Shown here: piece after piece, positions 16,280-49,449 of the stretch
Layout of the letters: the number at the start of each line of letters is the position of its first letter
Position numbering within the stretch: the first letter of the stretch is position 1
Assembly: GCF_001194135.2 (NCBI RefSeq)
Contig: NC_068986.1
Location: 66,253,799 to 66,317,798 of the forward strand
Source: Octopus bimaculoides
Lineage: Eukaryota
Length of the DNA: 64,000 nucleotides
Reading direction: 5' to 3'
Position numbers and translations under genes: made by a program
Notes under the pieces: generated by a model
Databases searched by the model: none
What the model saw: the letters and a program-made list of their open reading frames with translations, nothing else
What the model was told of the DNA's origin: nothing

Positions 16280-17745
16280 TTTGTGGTGGGTATCACAATC
16301 GCTACTTATATTCTTTGCACGATGTTTTAGGCACTGAGCAATCCCTCTCTTTACACTGTATAGATGGTGGGCGTTAAAGTTGAGGTATCATCCAGTATAG
16401 GTCGGCTTGCGATATACGGATGCCCTGAATCCATACTTGGTGTGTGTTACTAATATGTCCAGGAATGCTAGCTGATTGTCTTTTTCTTTTTCCACTGTAT
16501 TGACGGCTTTATTGAGTTCAGATGATCTAACAGCACTTGGACATCTTCTTGAAGGGGCCAGAGTATAAAGGTGTCATCAACATATCACACCCATAGGTTG
16601 GTTTTAGTGGTGTTGATCCTAAAGCCAAATTCTCAATGTATTTCATGTATATATTGGCTATTACCGGCGATAATGGCGAACCCATAGCTACACCCTCTTC
16701 TTGTCGATATATATCAGTGTCCATACTGAAGTAGGTAGTTTCTACACAGATGGTCAACATTTCCATCAAGTTTCTTATCGGTATATTTGTGCATTCTTTT
16801 AGATGGGTATCTGTCACTAGTTTTTCTTGAATCACCAATAGTGCTTCACCAGTTGGGCCTTTGGTGAACAGACTTGTCACATCTAGACTCACGATCTGGT
16901 TGGATTTAATGGGAGCATCATTGTTCAATTCTGTGAAGTGGGTGTAATCCTTCACGTATGATGTTGACTTTACTGCTAATGGACTGATTATATCCACAAG
17001 GAAGCGGCTCAGTGGATGACATGCTGAACCTCTACAGCTCACTATAGGTCTTAATGGAATACCATCCTTGTGAATCATAGGAAGACCGTACATGTGTGAT
17101 AGTTTACTGTAGTGTTGAGTCAGTTGTCTGTACTTCATTGGCGTAAAGTGATCCTTGTTCTTAATCAAGATCTGTGACAACTTCCTCTCTATTTTCAAAG
17201 TCGGGTCTTTTTTTACTTTGTTGTAGCTACCATCATATATAAGACTTGCTAACTTTTCAGAGTAGTCAGACTTGTTCATCACCACTGTAGTATTTCCCTT
17301 GTCTGCTGGAAGTATTTTGATGGAATTGTCACTCTGTAGTCTTTTGATAGCAAACTTTTCTTCCTTAGTGATGTTTGGTTTGGAAAGTTTCGGTTTTTCT
17401 AATACCTGTCTCACTTTCCACTTTAGTTCATCTCCCTGAGCTTTTGGTATCTTTACGGCTATCTCTTCAATAGGGGCTATTATTTCCAAGTATGGAATGC
17501 ACTTGATAGTTGTCTCAAAGTTGAGACCTTTGTTTAGTACTGCTTCTTCAGAGCTTTCTAGATGTCGGCTATTTACATTAATTACTGCTTTCACAGGTGA
17601 GTGACGGACTTCAGTCTTTATTCTCTGACCTTTGAGTTTCTCCAAGACACCTGATGAAGGCTGGAGGGTATATCGGCTGAAACGTTGTGTTAACAGCAAA
17701 CAAGATGGGGACAAATATCTGTCAAATGTAAATAATGTATCTAAC
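16280..17745 (-). mobile_element. Penelope-like element, RT region (GIY-YIG not present)
   Basis: ORF 16527-17750: EAVLNKGLNF, ILPADKGNTTVVM, YGLPMIHKDGIPLRPIVS, SLDVTSLFT, GVAMGSPLSPVIANIYM; after a frameshift YVDDTF, LAFLDILV, VYRKPTYTG. Confidence 0.9.
17646..17691 (+). ncRNA. minimal type I hammerhead ribozyme motif (PLE-associated)
   Basis: GACAC-CUGAUGA-A-GGCUG[GAGGGUAUAU]CGGCU-GAA-ACGU-U-GUGUU: intact core, helix I 5 bp, helix II 5 bp with wobbles, palindromic ACGU helix III. Confidence 0.75.
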
Positions 17746-17791
17746 CACATAGTTGTGAAATGAACTTCTAATCCATACAGTCATGTCTGTG

Positions 17792-22924: not shown

Positions 22925-23145
22925 CTTAAGCTGATGATCTGGCAGAATCATTAACACCCCAGGCAAAATGCTTAGTGGTATTTGGTTTGTCTTTATATTC
23001 TGAGTTCAAATTCCACCAAGGTCAACTTTACCTTTCCATCCTTTCAGGGTTGATAAAATAAATACCAGTTGAGCACTGGTATAGTTGACTTGCATCTTCC
23101 CCGGAGATTGCTCACCTTGTGCCAAAATTTGAAACCAGTATTTAG
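22925..23145 (+). mobile_element. tRNA-derived SINE family 2
   Basis: tggcagaatcattaacacc...ctgagttcaaattccaccaaggtcaac...gataaaataaataccag; matches 46451-46666. Confidence 0.75.
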
Positions 23146-23592: not shown

Positions 23593-24327
23593 NNNNNNNN
23601 NNNNNNNNNNNNNNNNNNNNNNNNNNNNNNNNNNNNNNNNNNNNNNNNNNNNNNNNNNNNNNNNNNNNNNNNTTGAAATCATGTTAGATGCCATTAGATG
23701 GTGGGTTTCAAGTTTAAATATTTTTTTAATTACATTTTTTTATATTTTTGAACGCACAGAATTAGAATACCTCGTTGATTCTCTCTCTCTCCCTCTCTCT
23801 CTCTCTCTCTCCCTTTCTCTTTCTCCCTCTCTCTCTCCCTCTCTCTCTTCTCTCGGTCGCGCGCCAAATTTTCCTCATTGAATGCATTTCAAATTAATTT
23901 TTTTCCACATATTTATTGAACATTTATGTTTCACAAAGACACCTCAAAACTAGAACACATTGGCAATCAAGTCGTTTTCATGGATTCAGTTTCAACTATT
24001 TTAATTGATATCTTCGATATTTTCATTTTAATAACTTCGTTAGTTTAATATACTGCTAAAATATAGTACGGTGAAAGCTGATCTACTTTTCATCGTAAGT
24101 CAGCTTACTCGTGCTTTACTAACATGAGTAGTTAAAATTTAGTTATTTTGCGTGCAATTCAAATAAGCGAAATAAGTTTCGAATGTTTTTCCTGTGAGTT
24201 ATTCCCCTTCGTATTGTATTTTTACTTTTTGTTGTTATGCAACTGCAATTAATCTCTTACATTTTTATTTTGTGTTATATATATATATATATATATATTA
24301 TATACACACACACACACAATAATTTTA

Positions 24328-24598
24328 TTACATGGAAAAATGCGAACATGAAAAGTAATATTCTTAAGATTATAAACCTGGAAAAGTACAGGACAAGTTG
24401 TTACACCTGTAAAAGTATAGGACAAGCTATTACTTCAAGTAAAGTAAAGAATAAGAAACTTTTTACTTAAAATATTGCAGCTAAAATTAAAATTTGAATA
24501 TTAAAAATTATTTTATTATAGTTTGCAATTAACGCTATACTTATTTAAGTGGAATTTGGCTAATTTACTACCTTAAATACAGAAAAAAGTGACTAATT
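24328..24598. repeat. copy A of AT-rich multicopy element
   Basis: 24328-24521 is a slightly diverged reverse complement of 24982-25165 and a direct copy of about 49258-49449. Confidence 0.85.
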
Positions 24599-24981
24599 NN
24601 NNNNNNNNNNNNNNNNNNNNNNNNNNNNNNNNNNNNNNNNNNNNNNNNNNNNNNNNNNNNNNNNNNNNNNNNNNNNNNNNNNNNNNNNNNNNNNNNNNNN
24701 NNNNNNNNNNNNNNNNNNNNNNNNNNNNNNNNNNNNNNNNNNNNNNNNNNNNNNNNNNNNNNNNNNNNNNNNNNNNNNNNNNNNNNNNNNNNNNNNNNNN
24801 NNNNNNNNNNNNNNNNNNNNNNNNNNNNNNNNNNNNNNNNNNNNNNNNNNNNNNNNNNNNNNNNNNNNNNNNNNNNNNNNNNNNNNNNNNNNNNNNNNNN
24901 NNNNNNNNNNNNNNNNNNNNNNNNNNNNNNNNNNNNNNNNNNNNNNNNNNNNNNNNNNNNNNNNNNNNNNNNNNNNNNNNN

Positions 24982-25457
24982 NATAATAAAATAATTTTTA
25001 ATATTCAAATTTTAATTTTAGCTGCAATATTTTAAGTAAAAAGTTTCTTATTCTTTACTTGAAGTAATAGTTTGTCCTATACTTTTACAGGTGTAATAAC
25101 CTGTCCTGTACTTTTCCAGGTTTATAATCTTAAAAATATTACTTTTCATGCTCGCATTTTTCCACGTAATCAATGATTTTTCCAGGCATTGCTGTGATAA
25201 GATAATTAATAATGTCTCAATTAATAATTTAAGATTTTACCTTATAAAATACTGAAAGATAATATTTCAATTTTTCCATGTAAGTGATGATAATATTTCA
25301 TTTTTTTTTTTTATGTTTCATTTAAATATATGTTGTGATTGAATTATTTGATATTACCCATCCACACTAAATTAATGGCAGAGATTTTTAACATGTTGTT
25401 GGTTGCACCATGGCTCACAAAAAGTTTCAAACAACAAGACCCGAAAACCATCAGTTA
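24982..25457. repeat. copy B of AT-rich multicopy element
   Basis: Reverse complement of 48979-49449 along its whole length. Confidence 0.85.
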
Positions 25458-25724
25458 CCAGGTTCACCTTAAGTAATCTAATTTTGCAATAAAAAATGAC
25501 TATTATTGTACCTTCAATTCTATGTAAATATTTGTTTTTCCATATATTAAAACTATTTTATAAACCAAAAGAACCATTTTTAATTTCCAAATTTAAGAAA
25601 ATGTTCTTGTTAATTTTTTTTATTTATGAATTTTGTTCCTAAATAATCATTAATCAGTTATACAATCTACGTCTTAAATTTAATTTTTAGTTACAATTCC
25701 ACTGAATTTTACTTTTTAATTTTT

Positions 25725-26404
25725 TCACATTTTTTCCATAAATAATAAAACAATGTTAGGCAATTTGGGAGGAAATTTAGTATGTCTTTATGTAATGATG
25801 TCACTGATTTCATCCCAAATATCATCTCCAGTTTTAATCAGTGTGGTATAATGGCCTGCTCTAGATGTTGGTCCTCTATGAATAGCAGCAACTTTTAGAT
25901 TAAAATTTGTGCCAAATATTTGCTGCCTTTTTGAACTGAAGTTCATTATATCACATTTGATTCTTTCTTCCATATTAATATTTTGATTAATTAAAAATCT
26001 ATTAATTTGAATAACAAGATATTTAAATTCAGGAGGAAATTCAATTCTGGAAGTAATTTGATGTTCAATATTGAGTGAAGATGTTTCACAATTTTTTGTA
26101 AGTGAATATGTTGTATTTTAGTAGTCAAAAATTTAAATTGTTGAGGACCATGAGTTAGTTGCAAAAACAATTCTTCTTTTAAATCAATAGGTAGCTGTGA
26201 TTGTCTATCACAGCCAGGAGTTGTATTGCAGTTGCAAATTTCATTTATAAAGATGTTGCAAGTATGTTGATGCAATCTAATGCATCTAGCAGTGTCATAT
26301 TTGATGAATATAAACTTTTGTTGAAATCCCATTTCAAAACGAAGATAAATTTCTTTCCCAAATTCACGAGCACATTGTTGACTTCCATCATTAAATCTTC
26401 GACC
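25725..26404 (-). pseudogene. intronless ubiquitin-specific protease (peptidase C19)-like remnant
   Basis: FNDGSQQCAREF (QQDA.EF-like), ICNCNTTPGC, KYLVIQINRF (LVIHLKRF-like), IHRGPTSRAGHYTTLIK...WDEISD (His box), NIVLLFMEK (YLLFY-like); one frameshift and one stop; Cys box absent. Confidence 0.75.
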
Positions 26405-26819
26405 TATAATCCTTTTTTAAATTTGTGAGTGTTTTGATTATGATAAAGAATATTTGGGCGTGTGATTTAGGTAGGGGGATACTTTGGCTGCTATTTTTAG
26501 TGTGTCAAACGACCAGGTAGAGGCTCTTTCATTGGTTCAATAGCATGATAAGATTTTTTTACACATAAATGTAATATGTATATGTATCATCGGCAGAAAT
26601 TAGAGAGCAAGTCAAAAGCTGAGAATTTTGTGTATTGGCACTTATCAAACATAAATTTGTCCATTGTCACTCTGTAACTTCTGACAAAATAACTTCTAAA
26701 ATGCAAAATTTTGTCCAAAACATTAAGAGTAAACCCTGTTCTATGTGACACATTTTACCAGTATCGGAAGTTTGAAAGTGTTTAGTTTAAAAAAAAGTAA
26801 TTAAATAATCTGTACGTCT

Positions 26820-26905
26820 AATTGAATAGATCTGAAATGGATGAAAGGCAAAGTCGACCTCGACGGAATTTGAACTCAGAATGTAAAGACAGACGAAATA
26901 CCGCT
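26820..26905 (-). mobile_element. SINE family 2 fragment
   Basis: gatgaaaggcaaagtcgacc...gaatttgaactcagaatgtaaagac...gaaataccgct is the reverse complement of the 46451 copy. Confidence 0.7.
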
Positions 26906-27699
26906 TCTAAAACCGCTACGTGGGATTCACGGTCAAACGACTGAATATATATGTATAGAGAGAGAGAGATTTTTGTTCCTTAATAGAACTATTAGTTCAC
27001 ACTTCGATAGCCTTATACTTCTTGTACAAATCAGCTCAGGTTTTCCTCTTGACAACAACACCGTTTAATGCTCCGTTAAAGTTTGATTTTTGCATAGTGA
27101 TGCACTAGACTAGATAGCTCCCTCTACTGAATAACATTGGTATTCATCGACTTCTGTAGTCAATATATTTATATTATTTTTATGATTGGAATTCGGTAAA
27201 AATGCTTTGAGATTTCCTAAAGGTAAAACCTATTGCTTCAACCACTTTCATTATTTTTAATTATGTCTATTCGGTATCAGGGTTTACCCTGCTCGCATAG
27301 ACTGAACACTAACGTAAATACAACTTCTATCAATGTATTCATTCACTTGTCATTTCCTTTCACTTACGATACCAGGGGAAGTGATTCTGCAGTTTCTTTC
27401 TGAATTATTTCCCTTCTTACTGTATGAATTTCAAGCGCAACTTTTGCTTTGATAATTACTATAATTTTCTATCGTGTGTTTGTATGTTTTTATGTGTACA
27501 CCTATTTATGTATGCTTGTGTGCGTAAATACACTCGAAGGTTGCACCAAAATAATGCAAAAGTGGAAATGATTTTTTTTTTAACCTACAAAGTTCCTTTA
27601 AGTTGCACATTCATCCTATTCTACTTCACTGCAGGCAAATAATGGTTTCCAAGCAGAAGTGACTAGTCATCATTGAGTGAACAAAAGATGAGTGCATAC

Positions 27700-28480
27700 T
27701 TGCTTCAGTTCTTTCTTGCCTTCACATGAGCCCACATCTCACTACTATGCAGTATCACAGTTCAAACACCAACATCATACAGTCTGCCCTTCAATCTAAA
27801 GGGAAAGACCTTTGTTATCTTTTTCCAACATATTCTTGTCCTTGTATTTTTAGAGCAACCACCTCCACTACTAATTATGTCACCAAGATAACAGAAGGTA
27901 TCTACTACGTCTAATGAGGTTTTCTGGCATTTAGGATGATATATATATCCCATATGCTCTTTGCCTCTGTGTATTTACTACATATAAAGCCTACCTTTTA
28001 CCATGCCTGTGATTCCACTACACTGCTTCTATGTTCATAGCTTACACTGGATAAAGCGCATGTAGTTCTTACCTGCTCTTTTTGTGCATACTGAGCATGG
28101 CCATTTCCCTGATGGTACCAAGATACTGATTTCTTTCCTGTATATTAACACCTCAATCTTTGCTAAGTTTATCTTGCGGCTTCTGGATTCTAGATTTTGC
28201 CTTCATGTCTGAAACTTCTCTAATTCTACTGTAGATTCTGCTCTAAGAACTAGATTATCACCATATTGGAGTTCACAAGAATAGCCAGTCTTAAATTTAT
28301 TTATGTTAGCCTGTAAAATTATGATGAATAAAAGCCTGAAGACTGAGCTTTGGTGAACTTCTACCACCTTGCTAAATTAATCTTTACATTCATTGCTGAA
28401 TCTCACTTCACTGACAGTTTGTACACCATTCACAAGCTCTTCAGCTACTCCTGGTTTCCTTAGGGACCACCTGATTACAG
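27700..28480 (-). mobile_element. RTE LINE fragment
   Basis: LDVVDTFCYLGDIISSGGGCS...LKGRLYD. Confidence 0.75.
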
Positions 28481-28699
28481 AACGTGGAACCCTATGTTAA
28501 GTTTAGCAGCTCACTGTTAACTAAGTATATCTCCTGCAGATGTCTCTTTGTTCCCACTTACAAATATAAAACTGAACTGTGTCTTAGTTAAATTAATTAT
28601 CCTGATCAATTGAGTTGTGACTCTATGGCATTCATGGCCTGGTCTAACAATTTGATACCTCTATAACTTTCTTTTTCTAGTGCCCTTTTTGACCTTGTA

Positions 28700-28746
<47 letters not shown>

Positions 28747-29389
28747 ANNNNNNNNNNAGAGAGCCATTTGTGTATCACACTTAATGTAAATACATCATTG
28801 AAAGGCAAATTTACTGTGGTATTCATCCAGAGATAATATCTCTTCTGGATGTGCTGTGTTTGAGAACATGACACACGCACACACATCAGAGGGAGACAAA
28901 AATCATTATAGAGGCAGCTAGCAAGTATGTTAGATGCATTTCAGCCTCATTGGGCCTCATCTTGTCTTAGCATATGGTTGTCCTCTACAAATTTTATTCA
29001 ATGATTGAAATTCATGAAATCAAATAAATTCTTGAAATATTATAAACTAAAATACATAGTAGCTACTTTCTCATCTTAGTACATTATATTCAATCCAGAT
29101 GGTGTAATTAATAATGAATATTTTAAATTATGCTCTGTAAAAGTGGCACTATACTAATGTTAACAATGTGAAAAAAAAATTTTTACTAACAAAACTGAAT
29201 TCATTATTTCTAATATATTATACTAGCAGAGGCACCCGGCGTTGCTTGGGAATGAAATTGTTGCTTATTGGTACTTGGAAACTTTTATGAAAATTAAAAT
29301 GGGGATTAAATGAAACAAATGATTTACGTGAATATCCTCACAAGAGTAATTGAAATAAATGGCGATTGTGGACCCCCTCCCCACGCACG

Positions 29390-29448
<59 letters not shown>

Positions 29449-30384
29449 ACACATCAGATGAAATGGACATGTGTGTGTGTGTGTGTGTGACAGAGAGAGA
29501 GAGAGAGAGAGGTTTGTTGTCATGTATACGTACATGGATAAATATGCATACATCTTTGTGTGTGAGTGTGTGTATGAGAGAGAGAGTAAATACTACATAC
29601 ACAACGCTCTCTCACACACACACACGCACACATACATCCAAAAATGATGGATGCATATGACAACACACCCCTTGACTCCCTCACACTCTGTTTCTTACAA
29701 ACACACACACACATACATAAATGTATACAAACATATTTACAAAGACACACATGTGTGTGTGCGCGTGCATGTGTGTGTTGTGCGAGTGAGAGAGAGGGGG
29801 GGTGAGAGAGAATATTGCGAAGCTAGTGAGAGAAGCTTTTTGCCGTTGTTACATCAATACCGGAAGTTGACATTGAGGAACCTTTTTAAAGAAGTGAATC
29901 TTAAATATAAAGCAATATTATTTATTTTTAATTAAAAAAATCAAATGAAGAGCCTAACATTTATCCAAGGTCAAATTATTCATGCATCACAAGTATGGAA
30001 GCATTTGGTGAAGTCTATTTCATGTGAAAAGCGAATACACAGACATCTGTTTTATATATTAGAAGATGCATTCCTGTTTCTTATATATACATCAAGAAGA
30101 TTTTTTCTAATAATTATAATTCAGTTGGTCAACTTCATTGTTTTATTTATGTGTCTATTTTGATATATTTTTGTGTATTTCTTTACATCCACCAGAGAGT
30201 TAAATGTAAGTAACATGTATAGTACATTTTTGGCCCTCTGTAGCTTGTTCTTGTATATTACTGTAAAATATAATAGTAAATTATTTATTAGCATGCTTTC
30301 ACTCAGCTGGCTTAGACACAAATTTTTAGCTCCTTATGTAATTGTTTGTGATGTAGGCACAAAGCTTGCAGTTTTGATGAGAGG

Positions 30385-38263: not shown

Positions 38264-40598
38264 CAGTGGTACCTCACAGTACGAGTTTAATTCGTTCCAT
38301 GACCAAGCTCATTTTATGATTTACTCATTTTACAAATCAATTTTCACCATTGAAATTGATTAATATATAATTAGTCCATTCTGGACCCCAAAAATCATTT
38401 GTTATGGGTCTTAAAAAAGAAAATGTGCAGTTACAAGGTAAATGACAATTATAAAAACATAATAAATGAGAATGCAAAAGAAATATGTAAACTGGTTTTA
38501 TTAATTTAATTACCTTAAAGATGGGATGATTTGTGTGCAAGGAAGAGAATGGGTCGGGGAGGTGGAGAATTATTGTTTGGAAGGAGAATTTCTTTCCATG
38601 AAGACTTTAGAAAGAACAATTTCTGGCATTTTCCATTACTTTTCACACTTGCAGGTCGTTTTATTAGAAACATATCAAGAGAAGTCTGCTTTTTCCTGCC
38701 TTTCAAAATGTTACAAAAATGCGCCAGAGCAGTGTCATTAAATAAAGCAGCTTCACAACCTGTAGATACTTCTCCAGGATGATATTTTTCTACAAATCCA
38801 GAAACATACTGCCACTTTGCCAACACTGCTTTTATGTCACTCGTAGAGATAGCCTTCACTGTCCTCCTCCAGGGAACCATTCTCTTCCACTACATCTGAA
38901 TCCTGCTGCTCCTGATACTGCAGAAGTTCATCTGTTATCAGCTTCTCTGAATTTTCCTCGAAGAGGTTGTTAATGTCCCTATCATCAACCTCGAGGCCCA
39001 TGGACTTGCCAAGATACACTATCTCCATGACTACAGGTGTCTCAGACTCAAACCCCTCAAACTCTTTTTTGGATACACAGCCAGGCCGCAGTTTCTTCCA
39101 TGCAGAATTCAGTGTTCTTCTCATTACACACTGCCAGCCCATATCAATGATTTTCAGCCACTTAACAATGTTGTAGTGCTCCTTCTAAAACTCAAAGGGT
39201 TAGTTATGTATTTTCAGTGACTTCAAAGCAACAACAAAATAGGTGTTTGGTGTACAATTTCTTAAAATTAGAAATCACCTGTTGGTCTATGGACTACAAG
39301 ATAGGGGTGGTGTTGCATGAAAGGTACAGAACTTTTATGAATTTAAATTCATCCAGGATATCATCTTCGAGGTTAAGAGGGTGAGTAGGAGCATTGTCAA
39401 AGATGAGGAGTGCCTTGAGAGGGAGATCGTTCTCCAGAAGGTACTTTTTAACTACTGGTTGGAAGACAAAATTGACCCACTAGGTGGAGAATTGCCTCAT
39501 GACCCTGGCTTTGATGTTTGCCCTCCACATGACCTATATATAGCTTCTCTTTCATGATTTTGTACAACTTGAATGCTCATGGATTTTGGAATGGTAGACA
39601 AGGAGCAGCTTAATTTTCAAGTCTCCACTCGCATTGGCACAAAGGGTGAGAGTTAGCCTGCCTTTCATAGGCCTGTAGCCTTGCATTTTCTTCTCCTCTG
39701 CAGTTACATGGGTTCTTCTGAGTATTTTTTCCAAAAAAACGACAGTTTGATCGCAGTTGGCTACTTGTTGTGCAATGTACCCCTCAGTTGTGATGAGCTG
39801 ATGAAATTCATGCACAAAATTCTCAGCTGCCATTGTGTCAGAATTCGCTGCTTCTCCATACCTCTTCTTGAAATTATTGAACCAGCTACAACTGGCCTTA
39901 AATGAGTCCACTGATGTCTCCTCTGTCGATGTTCCAAGATTCTGCTTCAGGAGATTCTCATACAGTTCTCATGCTTTCTTACAGATGAGGTTCTCTGTAA
40001 TCGTATCCCCTGTAAGTTACTTCTTGCTGATCCACAGGAGATGCAACTTTTCCATCTCTTTGTGGACAGATGTGCATTGCTTGGAGAGTCTGGCGACACC
40101 CTTTGCTGTTGTAACCACTTTGATCTCGTCCTTTTCCTTCAGGATGGTGCAGATTGTTGACATTCTTCAGTCACATTGACATGCTATATCCACTACATGC
40201 ATTCCTCTCTCATGTTTATCAATGATTTCCTTCTTTGCTGCTATCATAATCAGCATTTTCTCTCAGCATTGTCCTTTGCACTAACTTTCTTAGAACCCAT
40301 GGCTAACCCAACTAATTATAGAATAATAGCTAAAAGTGCACAAAACTAAAAAAAAACAGCTCTGGGAAAAACACAACAGGGATGCTGTTGCAACAAGATA
40401 AATACGTGAACTGAGCGAGTGCAGACTGCGTTTGTTGGGCGAATGTGTGTGAGCTCTGCACCAACTAACGGTCACTTGTATGAAACTCGCTCATATTGTG
40501 GATTTACACTCATACATCAAGACAAAAATTCACATGAGCCTCGGCTCATACAGCAAATTGCTCATACAATGGTGCACTCATATTGCAAGGTCCTACTG
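38264..40598 (-). mobile_element. Tigger/pogo DNA transposon, near full length
   Basis: TA-flanked TIRs cagtggtacctcacagtacgag / ctcatattgcaaggtcctactg; FKASCSWFNNFKKR, NCDQT, KGRLTLTLCANASGDLKIK, FDNAPTH, IDQQVISNFKK. Confidence 0.9.
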
Positions 40599-42159: not shown

Positions 42160-44900
42160 AAATTATTGTATACAGTGCTCAAGTGCACTACAACTTGTCA
42201 AAAGTGCATGTAAAGCATATGCAGTAATGTACAAATGTCTGGAAAGTGAACAGTGTATGAGTCAAGTACATGCTTGCGTGTGTATAGAGGGGAGAAAATC
42301 AGGTGTAGTGTTGGCGAATCTCAGGAAGCATGGAAGTTTTGAAGGATGCAGTGCTCCGACAGCTAACGACTGATGGGGATTGCGAAGGGGACCAACTGGA
42401 GAGTGAGGTCTCTGCTTTGAATGTACATACTTCCAGAACACTTTGCTGTCAGGGTTGGTTGCTATGCGCTGTTCGAATTCAAGCACTGCCTTTTTTGTCA
42501 CCTGCTTGAGATGGTTGGATGATCTATTGTGCTTTTTCCTGTTGATCTCTGATTTGTGCATTTTGTATTCCTGTTCAGTATTACGGCGTTCTTTCCTGGC
42601 AAGTCAGACTACTACAGTCTCCCAGATTGCAAAAAACCACCCAGATTGAGTGGTTTGGTACCGATGCTGCACATGCCATCCATATTGAATTCAGAATGTT
42701 CTGAAGTATAGTATTCACATCTCCAGAGACATAAAATTCGAGCCAGTTTGGGCATCGCCGCTCGGTACAATAAGAGTTCCAATCTGCTTTATTCCAGTCG
42801 AAGCGGGCAGTTTGAAGATGGTTGTGGTTTTTGTTACAACCAATCAGAGACAAGTTGGCCATGATCATGGAATGATCAGAGTCACCCAAAGGTTCTTCAG
42901 TAGTGACACTAATAATTGTTTCAGGAGAAGTGGTAAATAGCAGATCCAAAGCGTTGTTACCCCTTGTGGAGGAGGTAACGACTTGGGACCAATTTGAATT
43001 CAGCACTAGCTCAAGGAAATCGTCTGCACTTTGCGGCCAACGGAAGGCCTCCCAGTCAATCTCAAGGAAATTGAAGTCTCCTGCAATATAAACATAAGTG
43101 GCTGTTTTCATGGCAGCAACTCTGAGGACATCAAAAAGTTGTGTGTATTGATGATAATTTGGGCGGGGCAGTAAACAACTCCAAGTAGAAGTGTTGACAT
43201 GATCATGTGTATATTGCAGAAAAATACTTCCTGTTGAGATTGGTTCAAATCATTACAAGGAATTGCCAATAGGTTTGAATGAACATAAACCTTCACATTC
43301 CCACCACAGCGATTAATGCAGTCTTTGCAGAACCGGTTGTAGCTGGCTATTCTGAAAACCCCATCACAGAGTACAGAATGTGCCCATGTTTCCATGACTG
43401 TGATGAAATCTCGGTCGATACTTTTGACGTAAGAGTCAAAAAGATATACCTTGTTGCATAAACTACAGGCATTTAAGGACAACAGTTTGTATCTGGATTT
43501 CAGATGATGATGATATACAGAGGATGGCTGATTGTTCTTGTTTAGTTTCCTATGATTTTTGTATTGCCAGTTATTGTGGGTGCAGTATGCTCAGACCAAC
43601 TGATATCCCTTATCCATGATTCACCAGACTTGACGAATTTCCATATTTGCCCCTCGTCGCGTAGGCTAAAGAGTTGTGATTTATGGAAGTTACAGTTCTT
43701 AGCTTTGGGCGTATATCAGGTGGTAGGCCAGGGCGTGTCTGAAAGGTAATTCTGTTTTCGTGCCGAGCCCTATCAGCGGCTAGATGGTATGCCCACACCT
43801 CAGTAGAGTTTGAAAACGACAGCCCAATCAATTTGGGTTTGGATCCTGGTCGGCCAAGGTGGAAAGCACTTTTTGGAGAAACACAGCTTAGGTTCTTAGA
43901 TGTGTTACCAGTAAATGCCTGTAGATCAACTATGTCTTCTGATACTCTGATGACAATTACCTCATAGGTGGTTGATTCAGTGGCTTCCTCGATGTGTCTA
44001 GGTTCAGTAAGAGCTATGGGTAAATTGTTGAGCAAGGCACTCCGATACGATCCCTCATTGTGAGGCTTTGCACAGATGCTGGCTTTGATTTCTGCTATTT
44101 CTCAGCTTAAAGCAGAAATCATTTATCGAATTTCCGCAACTTCTGTACTGATGGTCGATTTTTGTTGGTGTTGAGAAGTGTCAGGAGAGGAGGGCATGGT
44201 TGGCTTTTGTTCCTGCTGATGTTCTTCGGCTGGAATGGTAAATTTTTGTTGTTGTTGAAGAATGACAGGGGAGGAAGACATTGGCGGCTTTAGCTTATAT
44301 CGATGTTCTTCAACAGGAATGGTCGATTTTTGTTGCTGTTGTTGAAGAGTGACAGGGGAGGAATACACTGGCGGGTTCAGTTTTTGTTGTTTTTCTTCAT
44401 CAACAGAACTGGTATTGGGAGACATAGTAGTTGGTTTCAGTTGCTGTTCAGCAGCAATGGCAGAAGATACCATTGTCGGTTTTTGTTGTTGCTGTTCAAC
44501 AAGGACACACAAGTCAGACACTGAAATGACCAGTTTAGTAGCTGGACCATTTCCCAGTGTTTATCCATCATAGAAGTATGGTGTCCTTTTTTTTGACCTG
44601 GGATCTTTTGAAAGCAGATCGAAACACAACATTTACTGCATTCAGCCCATCTATTTCGGAAGGAATTTTAGAGTTCTATGCATAGATGACAGATGTGATT
44701 TGCTGGGCAATGCTCTATTTTGGGACAGCGACCAGTTTTCTCACACAGTTCATCTACGGATGACAACGTGTCAGTTTTGTTCTGTCTGCCCATCCGTACC
44801 ATAGTGCAAAAGGTAAACAAATTAAAAAAAGAGACATGGAGACATAGCACACTTGTTAGGGAGATAAATAAGATGTTTTATTTTTTGTTGTTATTGTTGT
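42160..44900 (-). mobile_element. CR1/L2-group LINE with ORF1 + APE endonuclease, RT deleted
   Basis: Cys-rich ORF1 start, Q-rich repeats, HLGRPGSKPKLIGLSF; LNACSLCNK, VMETW, IAGDFN, TRGNNALDLL, GDSDH; FWKYVHSK joined directly to a C-terminal SVVSCRSTASFKTSML* and an att-rich tail. Confidence 0.85.
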
Positions 44901-46450: not shown

Positions 46451-46666
46451 GGTGGCGAGTTGGCAGAAATGTTAGCACGCCAGGTGAAATGCTTAGCGGT
46501 ATTTCGTGTGTCTTTACGTTCTGAGTTCAAATTCCACCAAGGTCGACTTTGCCTTTCATCCTTTCGGGGTCGATAAATTAAGTACCAGTTGCGTACTGGG
46601 CGAATCTAATTGACTGACTCCCCTCCCCCAAAATTTCGGGCCTTGTGCCTAGAGTAGAAAAGAATA
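46451..46666 (+). mobile_element. tRNA-derived SINE family 2, full length
   Basis: ggtggcgagttggcagaa (A-box-like)...ctgagttcaaattcc (B-box-like)...ggggtcgataaattaagtaccag. Confidence 0.85.
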
Positions 46667-48978: not shown

Positions 48979-49449
48979 TAACTGATGGTTCTGGCTCTTG
49001 TTTGTAACTTTTGGTGAGCCATGGTGCAACCAACAACATGGTAAAAATCCCTGCCATTAATTTGGTGTGGATGGGTAATATCAAACAATTCAATCACAAC
49101 ATATATTTAAATGAAACATGAAAAAAATTGAAATATTATCATCACTTACATGGAAAAATTTAAATATTATCTTTCAGTATTTTATAAGGTAAAATCTTAA
49201 ATTATTAATTGACACATTATTATCTTATAACAGCAATGCCTGGAAAAATCATGGACTACATGGAAAAATGCGAGCATGAAAAGTAATATTTTTAAGATTA
49301 TAAACCTGGAAAAGTACAGGACAGGTTATTACACCTGTAAAAGTATAGGACAAGCTATTACTTCTAGTAAAGTAGAGCATAAGAAACTTTTTATTTAATA
49401 TATTGCTGCTAAAATTAAAATTTGAATATTATAACTTATTTTATTATAG
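48979..49449. repeat. copy C of AT-rich multicopy element
   Basis: Reverse complement of 24982-25457. Confidence 0.85.

What the first reader, a model, noticed from the sequence alone, without database searches (positions are those of the whole stretch)
25725..26404. Intronless, AT-rich USP deubiquitinase remnant in a compact, virus-like context
The C19 motifs (QQxAxEF, putative Zn-ribbon cysteines, LVIQINRF, His box GHYT...W..ISD, C-terminal LLF) occur in order within about 680 bp, with no introns and short linkers. The ORF converges on the coding-like multicopy block B. The catalytic Cys box is missing where a SINE fragment (26460-26545) abuts it. Host USPs are typically multi-exon, so this may be cargo of a mobile element or endogenous DNA virus. 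A TE-borne USP family in octopus would be unusual. A processed pseudogene of a host USP is the alternative.
Basis: partly seen in the sequence, partly recalled or inferred. Interest (0 to 1): 0.7.

Follow-up and report, generated by a model that had tools for sequence, protein, structure and literature searches.

The report
Dead Helitron fragment carrying USP domain
The stretch is a broken, headless piece of a deubiquitinase domain that rolling-circle transposons (Helitron-like elements) carry behind their helicase; it is ordinary decayed transposon debris in a repeat-rich octopus-type genome, not a viral gene or a copy of a host gene.

Summary
The USP (peptidase C19) remnant is real. It lies on the minus strand at 25728-26455, slightly beyond the coordinates given. 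The C-terminal piece passes Pfam PF00443. The rest is recognised through an 80%-identical relative.

It is not an ORF. It has two frameshifts and one premature stop, and it lacks the Cys box and everything upstream.

Its nearest relatives decide its origin:
- In four of five relatives with enough flanking DNA, the USP domain follows directly on a Pif1-type helicase C-terminus.
- One contig shows Helitron_like_N (Rep), PIF1 helicase and UCH in a row.

So the window holds a 5'-truncated 3' fragment of a Helitron-like RepHel gene with a C-terminal USP domain.

The rival readings find no support:
- Host USP parent: none is detectable.
- Retrocopy: there is no poly(A) tail.
- Virus: no viral hallmark gene lies nearby, and no close viral relative was found.

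UCH domains in Helitron-like elements of group 2 were published in 2024 (HELIANO), and Helitrons are annotated in Octopus, so the kind is known. The claimed SINE at 26460-26545 could not be verified. Interest is low.

The parts
25728..26455 (-). Broken USP (peptidase C19, PF00443) domain remnant. It is the C-terminal three quarters of the domain that follows the helicase in a Helitron-like RepHel protein. It carries 2 frameshifts and 1 premature stop. The Cys box and everything upstream are missing.
   Evidence: Pfam UCH at E 3.7e-6, above the cut-off. tblastn of P0002 residues 71-244, summed E 8.6e-68, and of P0004/P0009/P0011/P0013 to the domain end at 25728. blastn to L002 at 86.7% over 585 bp, ending at 26455.
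25697..25727 (-). Short A-rich non-coding tail after the natural stop codon, running to the 3' boundary shared with an independent copy. It is the candidate right end of the element, with a weak 5-bp terminal stem-loop, and is followed by T in both copies.
   Evidence: The alignment with L006/L010 loses similarity at the same point in both copies while the flanks differ. The hairpin is -2.3 kcal/mol with z -2.1, and 10 of 200 shuffles fold as well. Inconclusive as a terminus.
26456..26830 (.). Unique sequence abutting the 5' truncation point (neighbour, not part of the element).
   Evidence: No other copy in the window or in the fetched loci. No tRNA. No Pfam hit in any minus-strand frame.
24983..25457 (.). 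Multicopy repeat 'block B' (neighbour, not part of the element). It runs into an assembly gap on its left side.
   Evidence: 91.7% identical to 48979-49447 in reverse. 93.9% identical to 24324-24519 in reverse, across the N run 24599-24982. The copy at 48979-49447 has no USP sequence next to it.

Best explanation
The remnant is the 3' end of a dead, 5'-truncated copy of a Helitron-like rolling-circle transposon.

In intact members of this lineage the transposase has three parts in a row: a Rep (HUH) nuclease domain, a Pif1-type helicase and a C-terminal USP deubiquitinase domain. They lie in one intronless reading frame or in directly adjoining frames.

The window keeps only the last three quarters of the USP domain plus about 30 nt of 3' tail. 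The catalytic cysteine, the helicase and the Rep domain are gone, and what remains has two frameshifts and one premature stop. The fragment is therefore inert.

Shown: the domain identity, the physical linkage of USP to helicase and Rep in relatives, the multicopy nature and the decay.

Inferred: in the living element the USP domain removes ubiquitin from the transposase or from host factors, and so protects them from proteasomal degradation or from a ubiquitin-based host restriction. This is by analogy with the biochemically active VTD deubiquitinases of Helitrons.

Also inferred: the family belongs to group HLE2 (Helitron2/Helentron type). Published surveys find UCH almost only there.
For: USP identity:
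- Pfam PF00443 for the window's C-terminal piece.
- A profile of the family hits solved USP12/46/5/15 catalytic domains at E 1e-18.

Relatives:
- An exhaustive phmmer search found 33 relatives.
- The closest is P0002 at 80% amino-acid and 86.7% nucleotide identity.
- On its contig L002, P0002 is directly preceded by a helicase C-terminus (UvrD_C_2, E 5e-8).

Linkage to helicase and Rep:
- L003 carries Helitron_like_N (E 2e-23), PIF1 (E 5e-30), Pif1_2B/UvrD_C_2 and UCH (E 1.5e-17) colinearly.
- L004 carries PIF1, Pif1_2B and UCH.
- L001, on an Octopus bimaculoides chromosome (XP_052827946.1), has helicase tail and USP in one 416-codon ORF.

Independent copies:
- The window, L002 and L006-L010 have different flanks and different 5' ends.
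- Two of them share the same 3' boundary.

Literature:
- UCH is stably included in HLE2 elements (PMC11417382).
- Helitron-encoded deubiquitinases of the VTD class are catalytically active; OTU domains also occur in Helitrons but are untested (PMC9741609).
- Helitrons are annotated in Octopus vulgaris (PMC13282606).
Against: - The window itself holds no Rep or helicase remnant. The Helitron assignment rests entirely on relatives.
- Canonical Helitron termini were not demonstrated. There is no CTRR end and no testable left end, and the terminal stem-loop is weak.
- One relative with 534 bp of upstream DNA (L005, P0004) shows no helicase tail. Stand-alone members may therefore exist.
- HLE2 membership was not tested directly. 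The DUF6570 marker region is not covered by any fetched contig.
- The source species of L002 and L006-L010 are unknown.
Confidence: 0.88

Rival explanations
1. Processed pseudogene: a retrocopy of a host octopus USP mRNA, inserted by LINE machinery and since decayed.
For: It is intronless, truncated at the 5' end, and has an A-rich stretch after the stop codon. LINE reverse-transcriptase and endonuclease remnants are common in the window. An imperfect 18-nt direct repeat lies at 25628-25645 and 26968-26985.
Against: - No protein sharing even three 5-residue words with either piece exists among 5.8 billion proteins. A high-identity host parent is therefore absent from annotated octopus proteomes.
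- The only named octopus relative (XP_052827946.1) is itself a helicase-USP fusion.
- The closest relative continues upstream into a Pif1 helicase, not into a USP N-terminus or a 5' UTR.
- There is no poly(A) tract at the shared 3' boundary or next to the 18-nt repeat.
- That repeat does not adjoin the homology boundaries and is of a size expected by chance in AT-rich DNA.
Confidence: 0.03
2. Cargo of an endogenous large DNA virus or a Polinton/Maverick-type element. Giant viruses encode USP-like proteases.
For: The remnant is AT-rich (28.7% GC against 36.3% for the window) and intronless. One giant-virus metagenome bin (L012) encodes a USP at 33% identity over 69 residues.
Against: - No viral hallmark domain was found in any minus-strand frame of 24983-28747 or in the window's long ORFs. 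Only RT, LINE endonuclease and Tc5/pogo DDE remnants appear.
- The viral and metagenome loci are distant generic USPs with no Rep or helicase next to them.
- A single-protein scan of viral contigs found nothing.
- The relatives at 30-80% identity are all linked to Helitron Rep/helicase.
Confidence: 0.02
3. A fragment of the USP domain carried passively: captured or rearranged inside a non-autonomous Helitron or another composite repeat, rather than simple 5' truncation of an autonomous copy.
For: Three loci hold only 3' pieces of different length (the window, L006-L010 and L011). Helitron-like elements are known for variable left ends and non-autonomous derivatives (PMC11417382).
Against: Nothing distinguishes this from plain truncation or deletion with the data in hand. 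The sequence upstream of 26455 is unique in the window, so no left terminal sequence can be recognised.
Confidence: 0.07

Closest known systems
Helitron-like elements of group 2 (HLE2: Helitron2/Helentron) with a UCH domain, as catalogued by HELIANO (Li et al., Nucleic Acids Res 2024, PMC11417382)
   Same: A Rep (Helitron_like_N) plus PIF1 helicase transposase with a Pfam UCH domain at a fixed position downstream of RepHel. Found in animals including molluscs. Copies are often fragmentary.
   Different: The window copy has lost Rep, helicase and the catalytic Cys. HLE2 termini (12-16 nt inverted repeats, 3' stem-loop, T-T target) could not be shown. The octopus subfamily has QQC in place of QQD and a Cys/His-rich insert in the finger region. 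Octopus is not named in the main text of that paper.
Helentron/Helitron deubiquitinase domains of other classes (VTD and OTU; Erven et al., Nat Commun 2022, PMC9741609)
   Same: A cysteine-protease deubiquitinase fused to a rolling-circle transposase. The VTD domains were shown to cleave K48/K63 ubiquitin chains. This gives a working model for why such elements carry a deubiquitinase.
   Different: The fold class differs: USP/C19 here, against VTD and OTU there. Those domains lie elsewhere in the protein, in elements that also carry an AP endonuclease. No endonuclease was seen downstream of the USP in L003.
Cellular USP catalytic domains (best solved matches USP12, USP46, USP5, USP15)
   Same: Same fold family. 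The family profile matches at E 1e-18 to 1e-17, with the Cys box, QQD box, zinc-ribbon cysteines and His box in the same order.
   Different: The domain is minimal, about 260-290 residues, with no accessory domains. It ends in a family-specific LFLEK-type tail and is fused to a helicase. No orthology to any particular host USP was found.

Membership tests
Peptidase C19 / USP (Pfam PF00443 UCH) | Profile match above Pfam's gathering score | tested here: met
   The C-terminal piece scores 27.2 bits against a cut-off of 23.9, E 3.7e-6. The N-terminal piece alone has no hit. The whole frame with stops marked X scores 23.8 bits.
Peptidase C19 / USP (Pfam PF00443 UCH) | Cys box with the catalytic cysteine | tested here: not met
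   Absent from the window. P0002 residues 1-70 have no counterpart. It is present in relatives P0002, P0004, P0011 and P0034.
Peptidase C19 / USP (Pfam PF00443 UCH) | QQD-type box, finger cysteines and His box (GHY) in order | tested here: met
   Read directly in the separate minus-strand frames and aligned with relatives. The QQD box is the variant QQC, as in P0002 and P0014.
Peptidase C19 / USP (Pfam PF00443 UCH) | Uninterrupted reading frame (a functional gene) | tested here: not met
   Two frameshifts, one premature stop and loss of the N-terminal quarter.
Helitron-like element (RepHel rolling-circle transposon) | Rep/HUH domain (Helitron_like_N) and PIF1 helicase in the same element | tested here: not met
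   Not present in the window. In relatives: L003 has Helitron_like_N at E 2e-23 and PIF1 at E 5e-30. L004 has PIF1. L001 and L002 have helicase C-termini. The window is therefore a fragment of such an element, not an element.
Helitron-like element (RepHel rolling-circle transposon) | USP domain physically continuous with the helicase in close relatives | tested here: met
   Four of five relatives with enough upstream DNA (L001, L002, L003, L004) show it. L005 does not.
Helitron-like element (RepHel rolling-circle transposon) | Several copies at different genomic sites | tested here: met
   The window, L002 and L006-L010 are about 86% identical in the USP part and have unrelated flanks. Whether they come from one species is unknown.
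Helitron-like element (RepHel rolling-circle transposon) | Diagnostic termini and target: HLE2 has short inverted repeats, a 3' stem-loop and T-T insertion; HLE1 has TC...hairpin-CTRR and A-T insertion | tested here: inconclusive
   Two copies share a 3' boundary and T follows in both. The 5-bp stem-loop is weak (z -2.1). There is no CTRR. The left end is missing, so inverted repeats cannot be tested.
HLE2 subgroup (Helitron2/Helentron) | DUF6570 marker domain, or phylogenetic placement of RepHel within HLE2 | not tested
   No fetched contig covers the region N-terminal of Rep, and no reference HLE1/HLE2 set is available in these tools. Assignment is inferred from the statement that UCH is almost exclusive to HLE2.
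Processed pseudogene of a host USP | High-identity host parent mRNA, poly(A) tail and flanking target-site duplication | tested here: not met
   No close protein in the word-index searches. No poly(A) at the 3' boundary. The only direct repeat is an imperfect 18-mer that does not adjoin the boundaries.
Endogenous DNA virus / Polinton | Viral hallmark genes (capsid, packaging ATPase, polB, integrase) next to the USP | tested here: not met
   None in the three minus-strand frames of 24983-28747 or in the long ORFs of the window. None next to relatives L001-L005.

The most novel reading that the evidence does not exclude
Octopus Helitron-like elements may carry a lineage-specific USP subfamily. 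Its marks are QQC instead of QQD and a Cys/His-rich insert replacing the first zinc-ribbon CxxC.

This subfamily evolves much faster than the helicase it is fused to. Between two octopus-type copies the USP is 33% identical and the helicase tail 68.5%. That pattern would fit an arms race between a transposon deubiquitinase and a host ubiquitin-based restriction.

The window's fragment would then be one fossil of that diversification.
Probability: 0.15. Interest if true: 0.4.

Novelty: new member of a known kind. Interest (0 to 1): 0.15.

Why it matters
It matters little for biology at this locus, because the fragment is inert.

It is useful for annotation. It shows that USP-like hits in cephalopod genomes can be Helitron debris. 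At least one RefSeq 'uncharacterized protein' of Octopus bimaculoides (XP_052827946.1) is a helicase-tail plus USP fragment of such an element, not a host gene.

It also adds an octopus example to the recent observation that rolling-circle transposons repeatedly recruit deubiquitinases of different folds (OTU, VTD, USP). That points to a general need of these elements to counter ubiquitination.

Tried and rejected
- Word-index protein searches with either piece found nothing. The alignment-based search found only 12 proteins, mostly generic USPs.
- Exact-product look-ups of two window ORFs found no record, so the source assembly was not identified.
- A viral-contig scan with the single piece found nothing.
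- Alignment A1 was too diverse for locus scans.
- The narrower alignment A3 returned one giant-virus bin and 15 metagenome loci. All are distant USPs without Rep or helicase, so they say nothing about this family.
- A search for Rep or helicase remnants in the whole window was negative.
- A search for another copy of the USP in the window was negative.
- The SINE claim at 26460-26545 found no support from self-comparison, ARAGORN or Rfam. The Rfam hits at 28.7-29.8 kb are microsatellite artefacts below the gathering scores.
- The OTU-like look of L001 9377-9694 was not confirmed. Pfam gave nothing, and the PDB OTU1 match was E 0.4.
- The Rep ORF of L003 has no significant match among solved structures.
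- The run accessions of the Logan contigs occur in no searchable paper.
- The HELIANO supplementary tables are not held, so the species list for UCH-bearing elements could not be read.

Full report
**1. What is in the sequence**

The feature lies on the minus strand. Three-frame translation of 25600-26600 shows the following, spread over separate frames:
- a QQCAREF box;
- a Cys/His-rich stretch;
- LVIQINRF;
- a GHY His box;
- after a stop, a tail ending in LLF-MEKM before the natural stop.

The C-terminal piece alone matches Pfam UCH (PF00443) at E 3.7e-6. Its score of 27.2 bits is above the curated cut-off of 23.9. The N-terminal piece has no Pfam hit of its own. Against solved structures, the C-terminal piece finds only weak USP14/USP15 matches.

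I scanned all three minus-strand frames of the gap-bounded block 24983-28747, with stops marked X. No further domain and no Cys box turned up upstream.

The remnant is 28.7% GC, against 36.3% for the window.

**2. Relatives**

The word-index protein searches with either piece found nothing. No annotated protein is therefore close, and that includes the octopus proteomes present in NCBI and UniRef.

The exhaustive phmmer search of 1.84 billion representatives with the C-terminal piece (stop marked X) gave 33 hits at E 0.001 or better. The main ones are:
- P0002: 244 aa, 80% identical.
- P0007: 39 aa, 94% identical.
- A set of compact USP proteins of about 285 aa (P0004, P0009, P0011), 31-36% identical.
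- P0013 and P0014, whose N-termini carry the C-terminal motifs of a Pif1-type helicase.
- Three giant multi-USP proteins (P0001, P0003, P0005). They rank high only because many tandem domains add up. This was shown by Pfam for P0001 and is read from the 20 and 5 matched stretches for P0003 and P0005.

By tblastn, P0002 residues 71-244 align to the window from 26454 downward in three different frames. The compact relatives carry the alignment on to the domain end at 25728. At the DNA level, L002 (the contig of P0002) matches window 26455-25874 at 86.7% over 585 bp. The first 597 bp of L002 have no counterpart in the window.

So the remnant spans 25728-26455. It lacks the first 70 or so residues of the domain, including the catalytic cysteine. 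It has two frameshifts and one premature stop.

**3. What the relatives are**

- *L002* (Logan run SRR20852289). Directly upstream of the USP lies an ORF with the helicase C-terminus: UvrD_C_2 at E 5e-8 and a Herpes_Helicase tail match.
- *L003* (ERR14875854, 5.4 kb). It carries, in one direction and abutting one another:
  - an ORF with Helitron_like_N (E 2e-23);
  - an ORF with PIF1 (E 5e-30);
  - P0034, which has Pif1_2B, UvrD_C_2 and a complete UCH domain (E 1.5e-17) in one frame.
- *L004* (SRR18067309). It shows PIF1, Pif1_2B/UvrD_C_2 and UCH in order.
- *L001*. P0014 is RefSeq XP_052827946.1, 'uncharacterized protein LOC128249111' of Octopus bimaculoides. Its locus on chromosome CM046601.1 is a single-exon 416-codon ORF with UvrD_C_2 followed by UCH.
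- *L005* (P0004). This is the only relative with no helicase tail in its 534 bp of upstream DNA.

Thus four of the five relatives that can be judged place this USP domain at the C-terminus of a Helitron-type Rep/helicase protein.

A profile of the family matches solved USP catalytic domains. USP12 and USP46 are best, at E about 1e-18, with no special affinity to one host paralogue.

**4. The window copy as a fragment**

Neither Rep nor helicase sequence occurs anywhere in the 64 kb. The USP DNA has no second copy in the window.

A second, independent fragment is known. It was assembled from five runs as L006-L010, which are one locus at 99.7-100% identity to each other. It matches window 25962-25695 at 86%.

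In the alignment, both copies lose similarity at the same point, about 30 nt after the stop codon. Their flanks there are unrelated. A shared 3' end with different 5' ends is what 5'-truncated or left-end-variable Helitron copies show.

The last 14 nt can form a 5-bp stem with a 4-nt loop, and T follows in both copies. This agrees with the HLE2 description of a 3' stem-loop and a T-T target. But the hairpin is weak: -2.3 kcal/mol, z -2.1, and 10 of 200 shuffles fold as well. With only two copies, I rate the terminus as inconclusive.

There is no CTRR end and no poly(A).

**5. Surroundings**

The window is a gap-ridden, repeat-rich metazoan scaffold with nine N runs. The long ORFs hold these remnants:
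- a reverse transcriptase (16.5-17.7 kb);
- a LINE-type endonuclease (42.6-43.1 kb);
- a Tc5/pogo DDE transposase (39.6-39.9 kb).

No capsid, packaging ATPase, polB or integrase domain was seen. The scan covered the long ORFs and the three minus-strand frames of 24983-28747.

'Block B' (24983-25457) is a real multicopy repeat. It matches 48979-49447 in reverse at 91.7%, and it has a partial inverted copy at 24324-24519 across an assembly gap. It ends about 240 bp short of the element's 3' boundary, and its other copy has no USP beside it.

The stretch called a SINE (26460-26545) has no other copy, no tRNA-like fold and no Rfam match. The nearest verified short interspersed repeat is 26832-26905, which has three copies in the window.

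**6. Rivals**

*Processed pseudogene.* The evidence is against it:
- no high-identity host parent exists;
- the closest copy continues into a helicase;
- there is no poly(A);
- the only direct repeat is an imperfect 18-mer that does not adjoin the boundaries.

*Endogenous DNA virus.* The evidence is also against it:
- there are no hallmark genes;
- viral-contig scans gave nothing close;
- the narrower scan gave one giant-virus bin at 33% identity over 69 residues;
- none of the viral or metagenome loci has Rep or helicase.

*Passive carriage in a non-autonomous derivative.* This cannot be separated from plain truncation with the present data.

**7. Comparison with what is known**

- HELIANO (Li et al. 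2024, PMC11417382) lists UCH among 20 extra domains 'stably included' in Helitron-like elements. It finds UCH almost exclusively in HLE2 and enriched in two HLE2 subgroups, at a conserved position relative to RepHel.
- Erven et al. 2022 (PMC9741609) showed that Helitron-encoded VTD domains are active deubiquitinases. They noted OTU domains in the same elements and proposed protection of transposition proteins from proteasomal degradation.
- Helitrons are annotated in Octopus vulgaris, with an expansion dated to about 25 My (PMC13282606).

The window's feature is therefore a decayed new member of a known kind. What it works like in the intact state is a transposase-linked deubiquitinase. That is an inference by analogy; nothing here tests activity.

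**8. Verdict**

- Observation: largely correct.
- Mobile-element reading: correct. Virus-like reading: not supported.
- Novelty claim: overtaken by the literature.
- Confidence in the Helitron-fragment explanation: 0.88.
- Interest: 0.15.

Noticed in passing
L001 9791-11041 (O. bimaculoides CM046601.1, about 173.157 Mb): RefSeq XP_052827946.1, 'uncharacterized protein LOC128249111', is a helicase C-terminus (UvrD_C_2) plus USP fragment of a Helitron-like element. It begins right after a CA microsatellite. It is likely a transposon fragment annotated as a host gene.
   Followed up: partly
L001 versus L002: Between these two octopus-type copies the helicase tail is 68.5% identical over 89 residues. 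The adjoining USP domain is only 33% identical over 254 residues. The USP part diverges much faster than the helicase, or the elements are mosaics.
   Followed up: no
window 26200-26300 (-); P0002 and P0014 in alignment A1 columns 137-165: The octopus subfamily has QQC instead of the usual QQD box. It also has an insert of about 20 residues rich in Cys and His where other family members have a simple CxxC. This may be a remodelled zinc site.
   Followed up: no
window 24324-24519 and 24983-25173: Two copies of the block B repeat lie in inverted orientation on either side of the N run 24599-24982. This is either a genuine palindromic arrangement or an assembly artefact at the gap.
   Followed up: no
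L001 9377-9694: An ORF just upstream of the helicase-USP ORF looks OTU-like by eye. It has no Pfam hit and only E 0.4-0.6 matches to solved OTU1/OTUD5. OTU upstream of RepHel is reported for Helitron-like elements.
   Followed up: partly
P0006 (945 aa, Logan contig of 3.9 kb): One ORF holds three tandem USP domains of this same family, each ending in the LFLEK-type tail. This is a tandem multiplication of the transposon-type USP.
   Followed up: no
window 16527-17750 (-), 39552-39911 (-), 42581-43111 (-): Decayed mobile-element genes: a reverse transcriptase (RVT_1, below cut-off), a Tc5/pogo-type DDE_1 transposase piece, and a LINE endonuclease (Exo_endo_phos_2). They show the general repeat-graveyard character of the window.
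   Followed up: partly
window 26832-26905, 22974-23047, 46495-46564: A short interspersed repeat with three copies in the window at 85-91% identity.
   Followed up: partly
window 28695-28792 and 29390-29780: TG/CA-rich microsatellites give sub-threshold Rfam hits to mir-297, mir-466 and mir-3149. These are low-complexity artefacts.
   Followed up: yes
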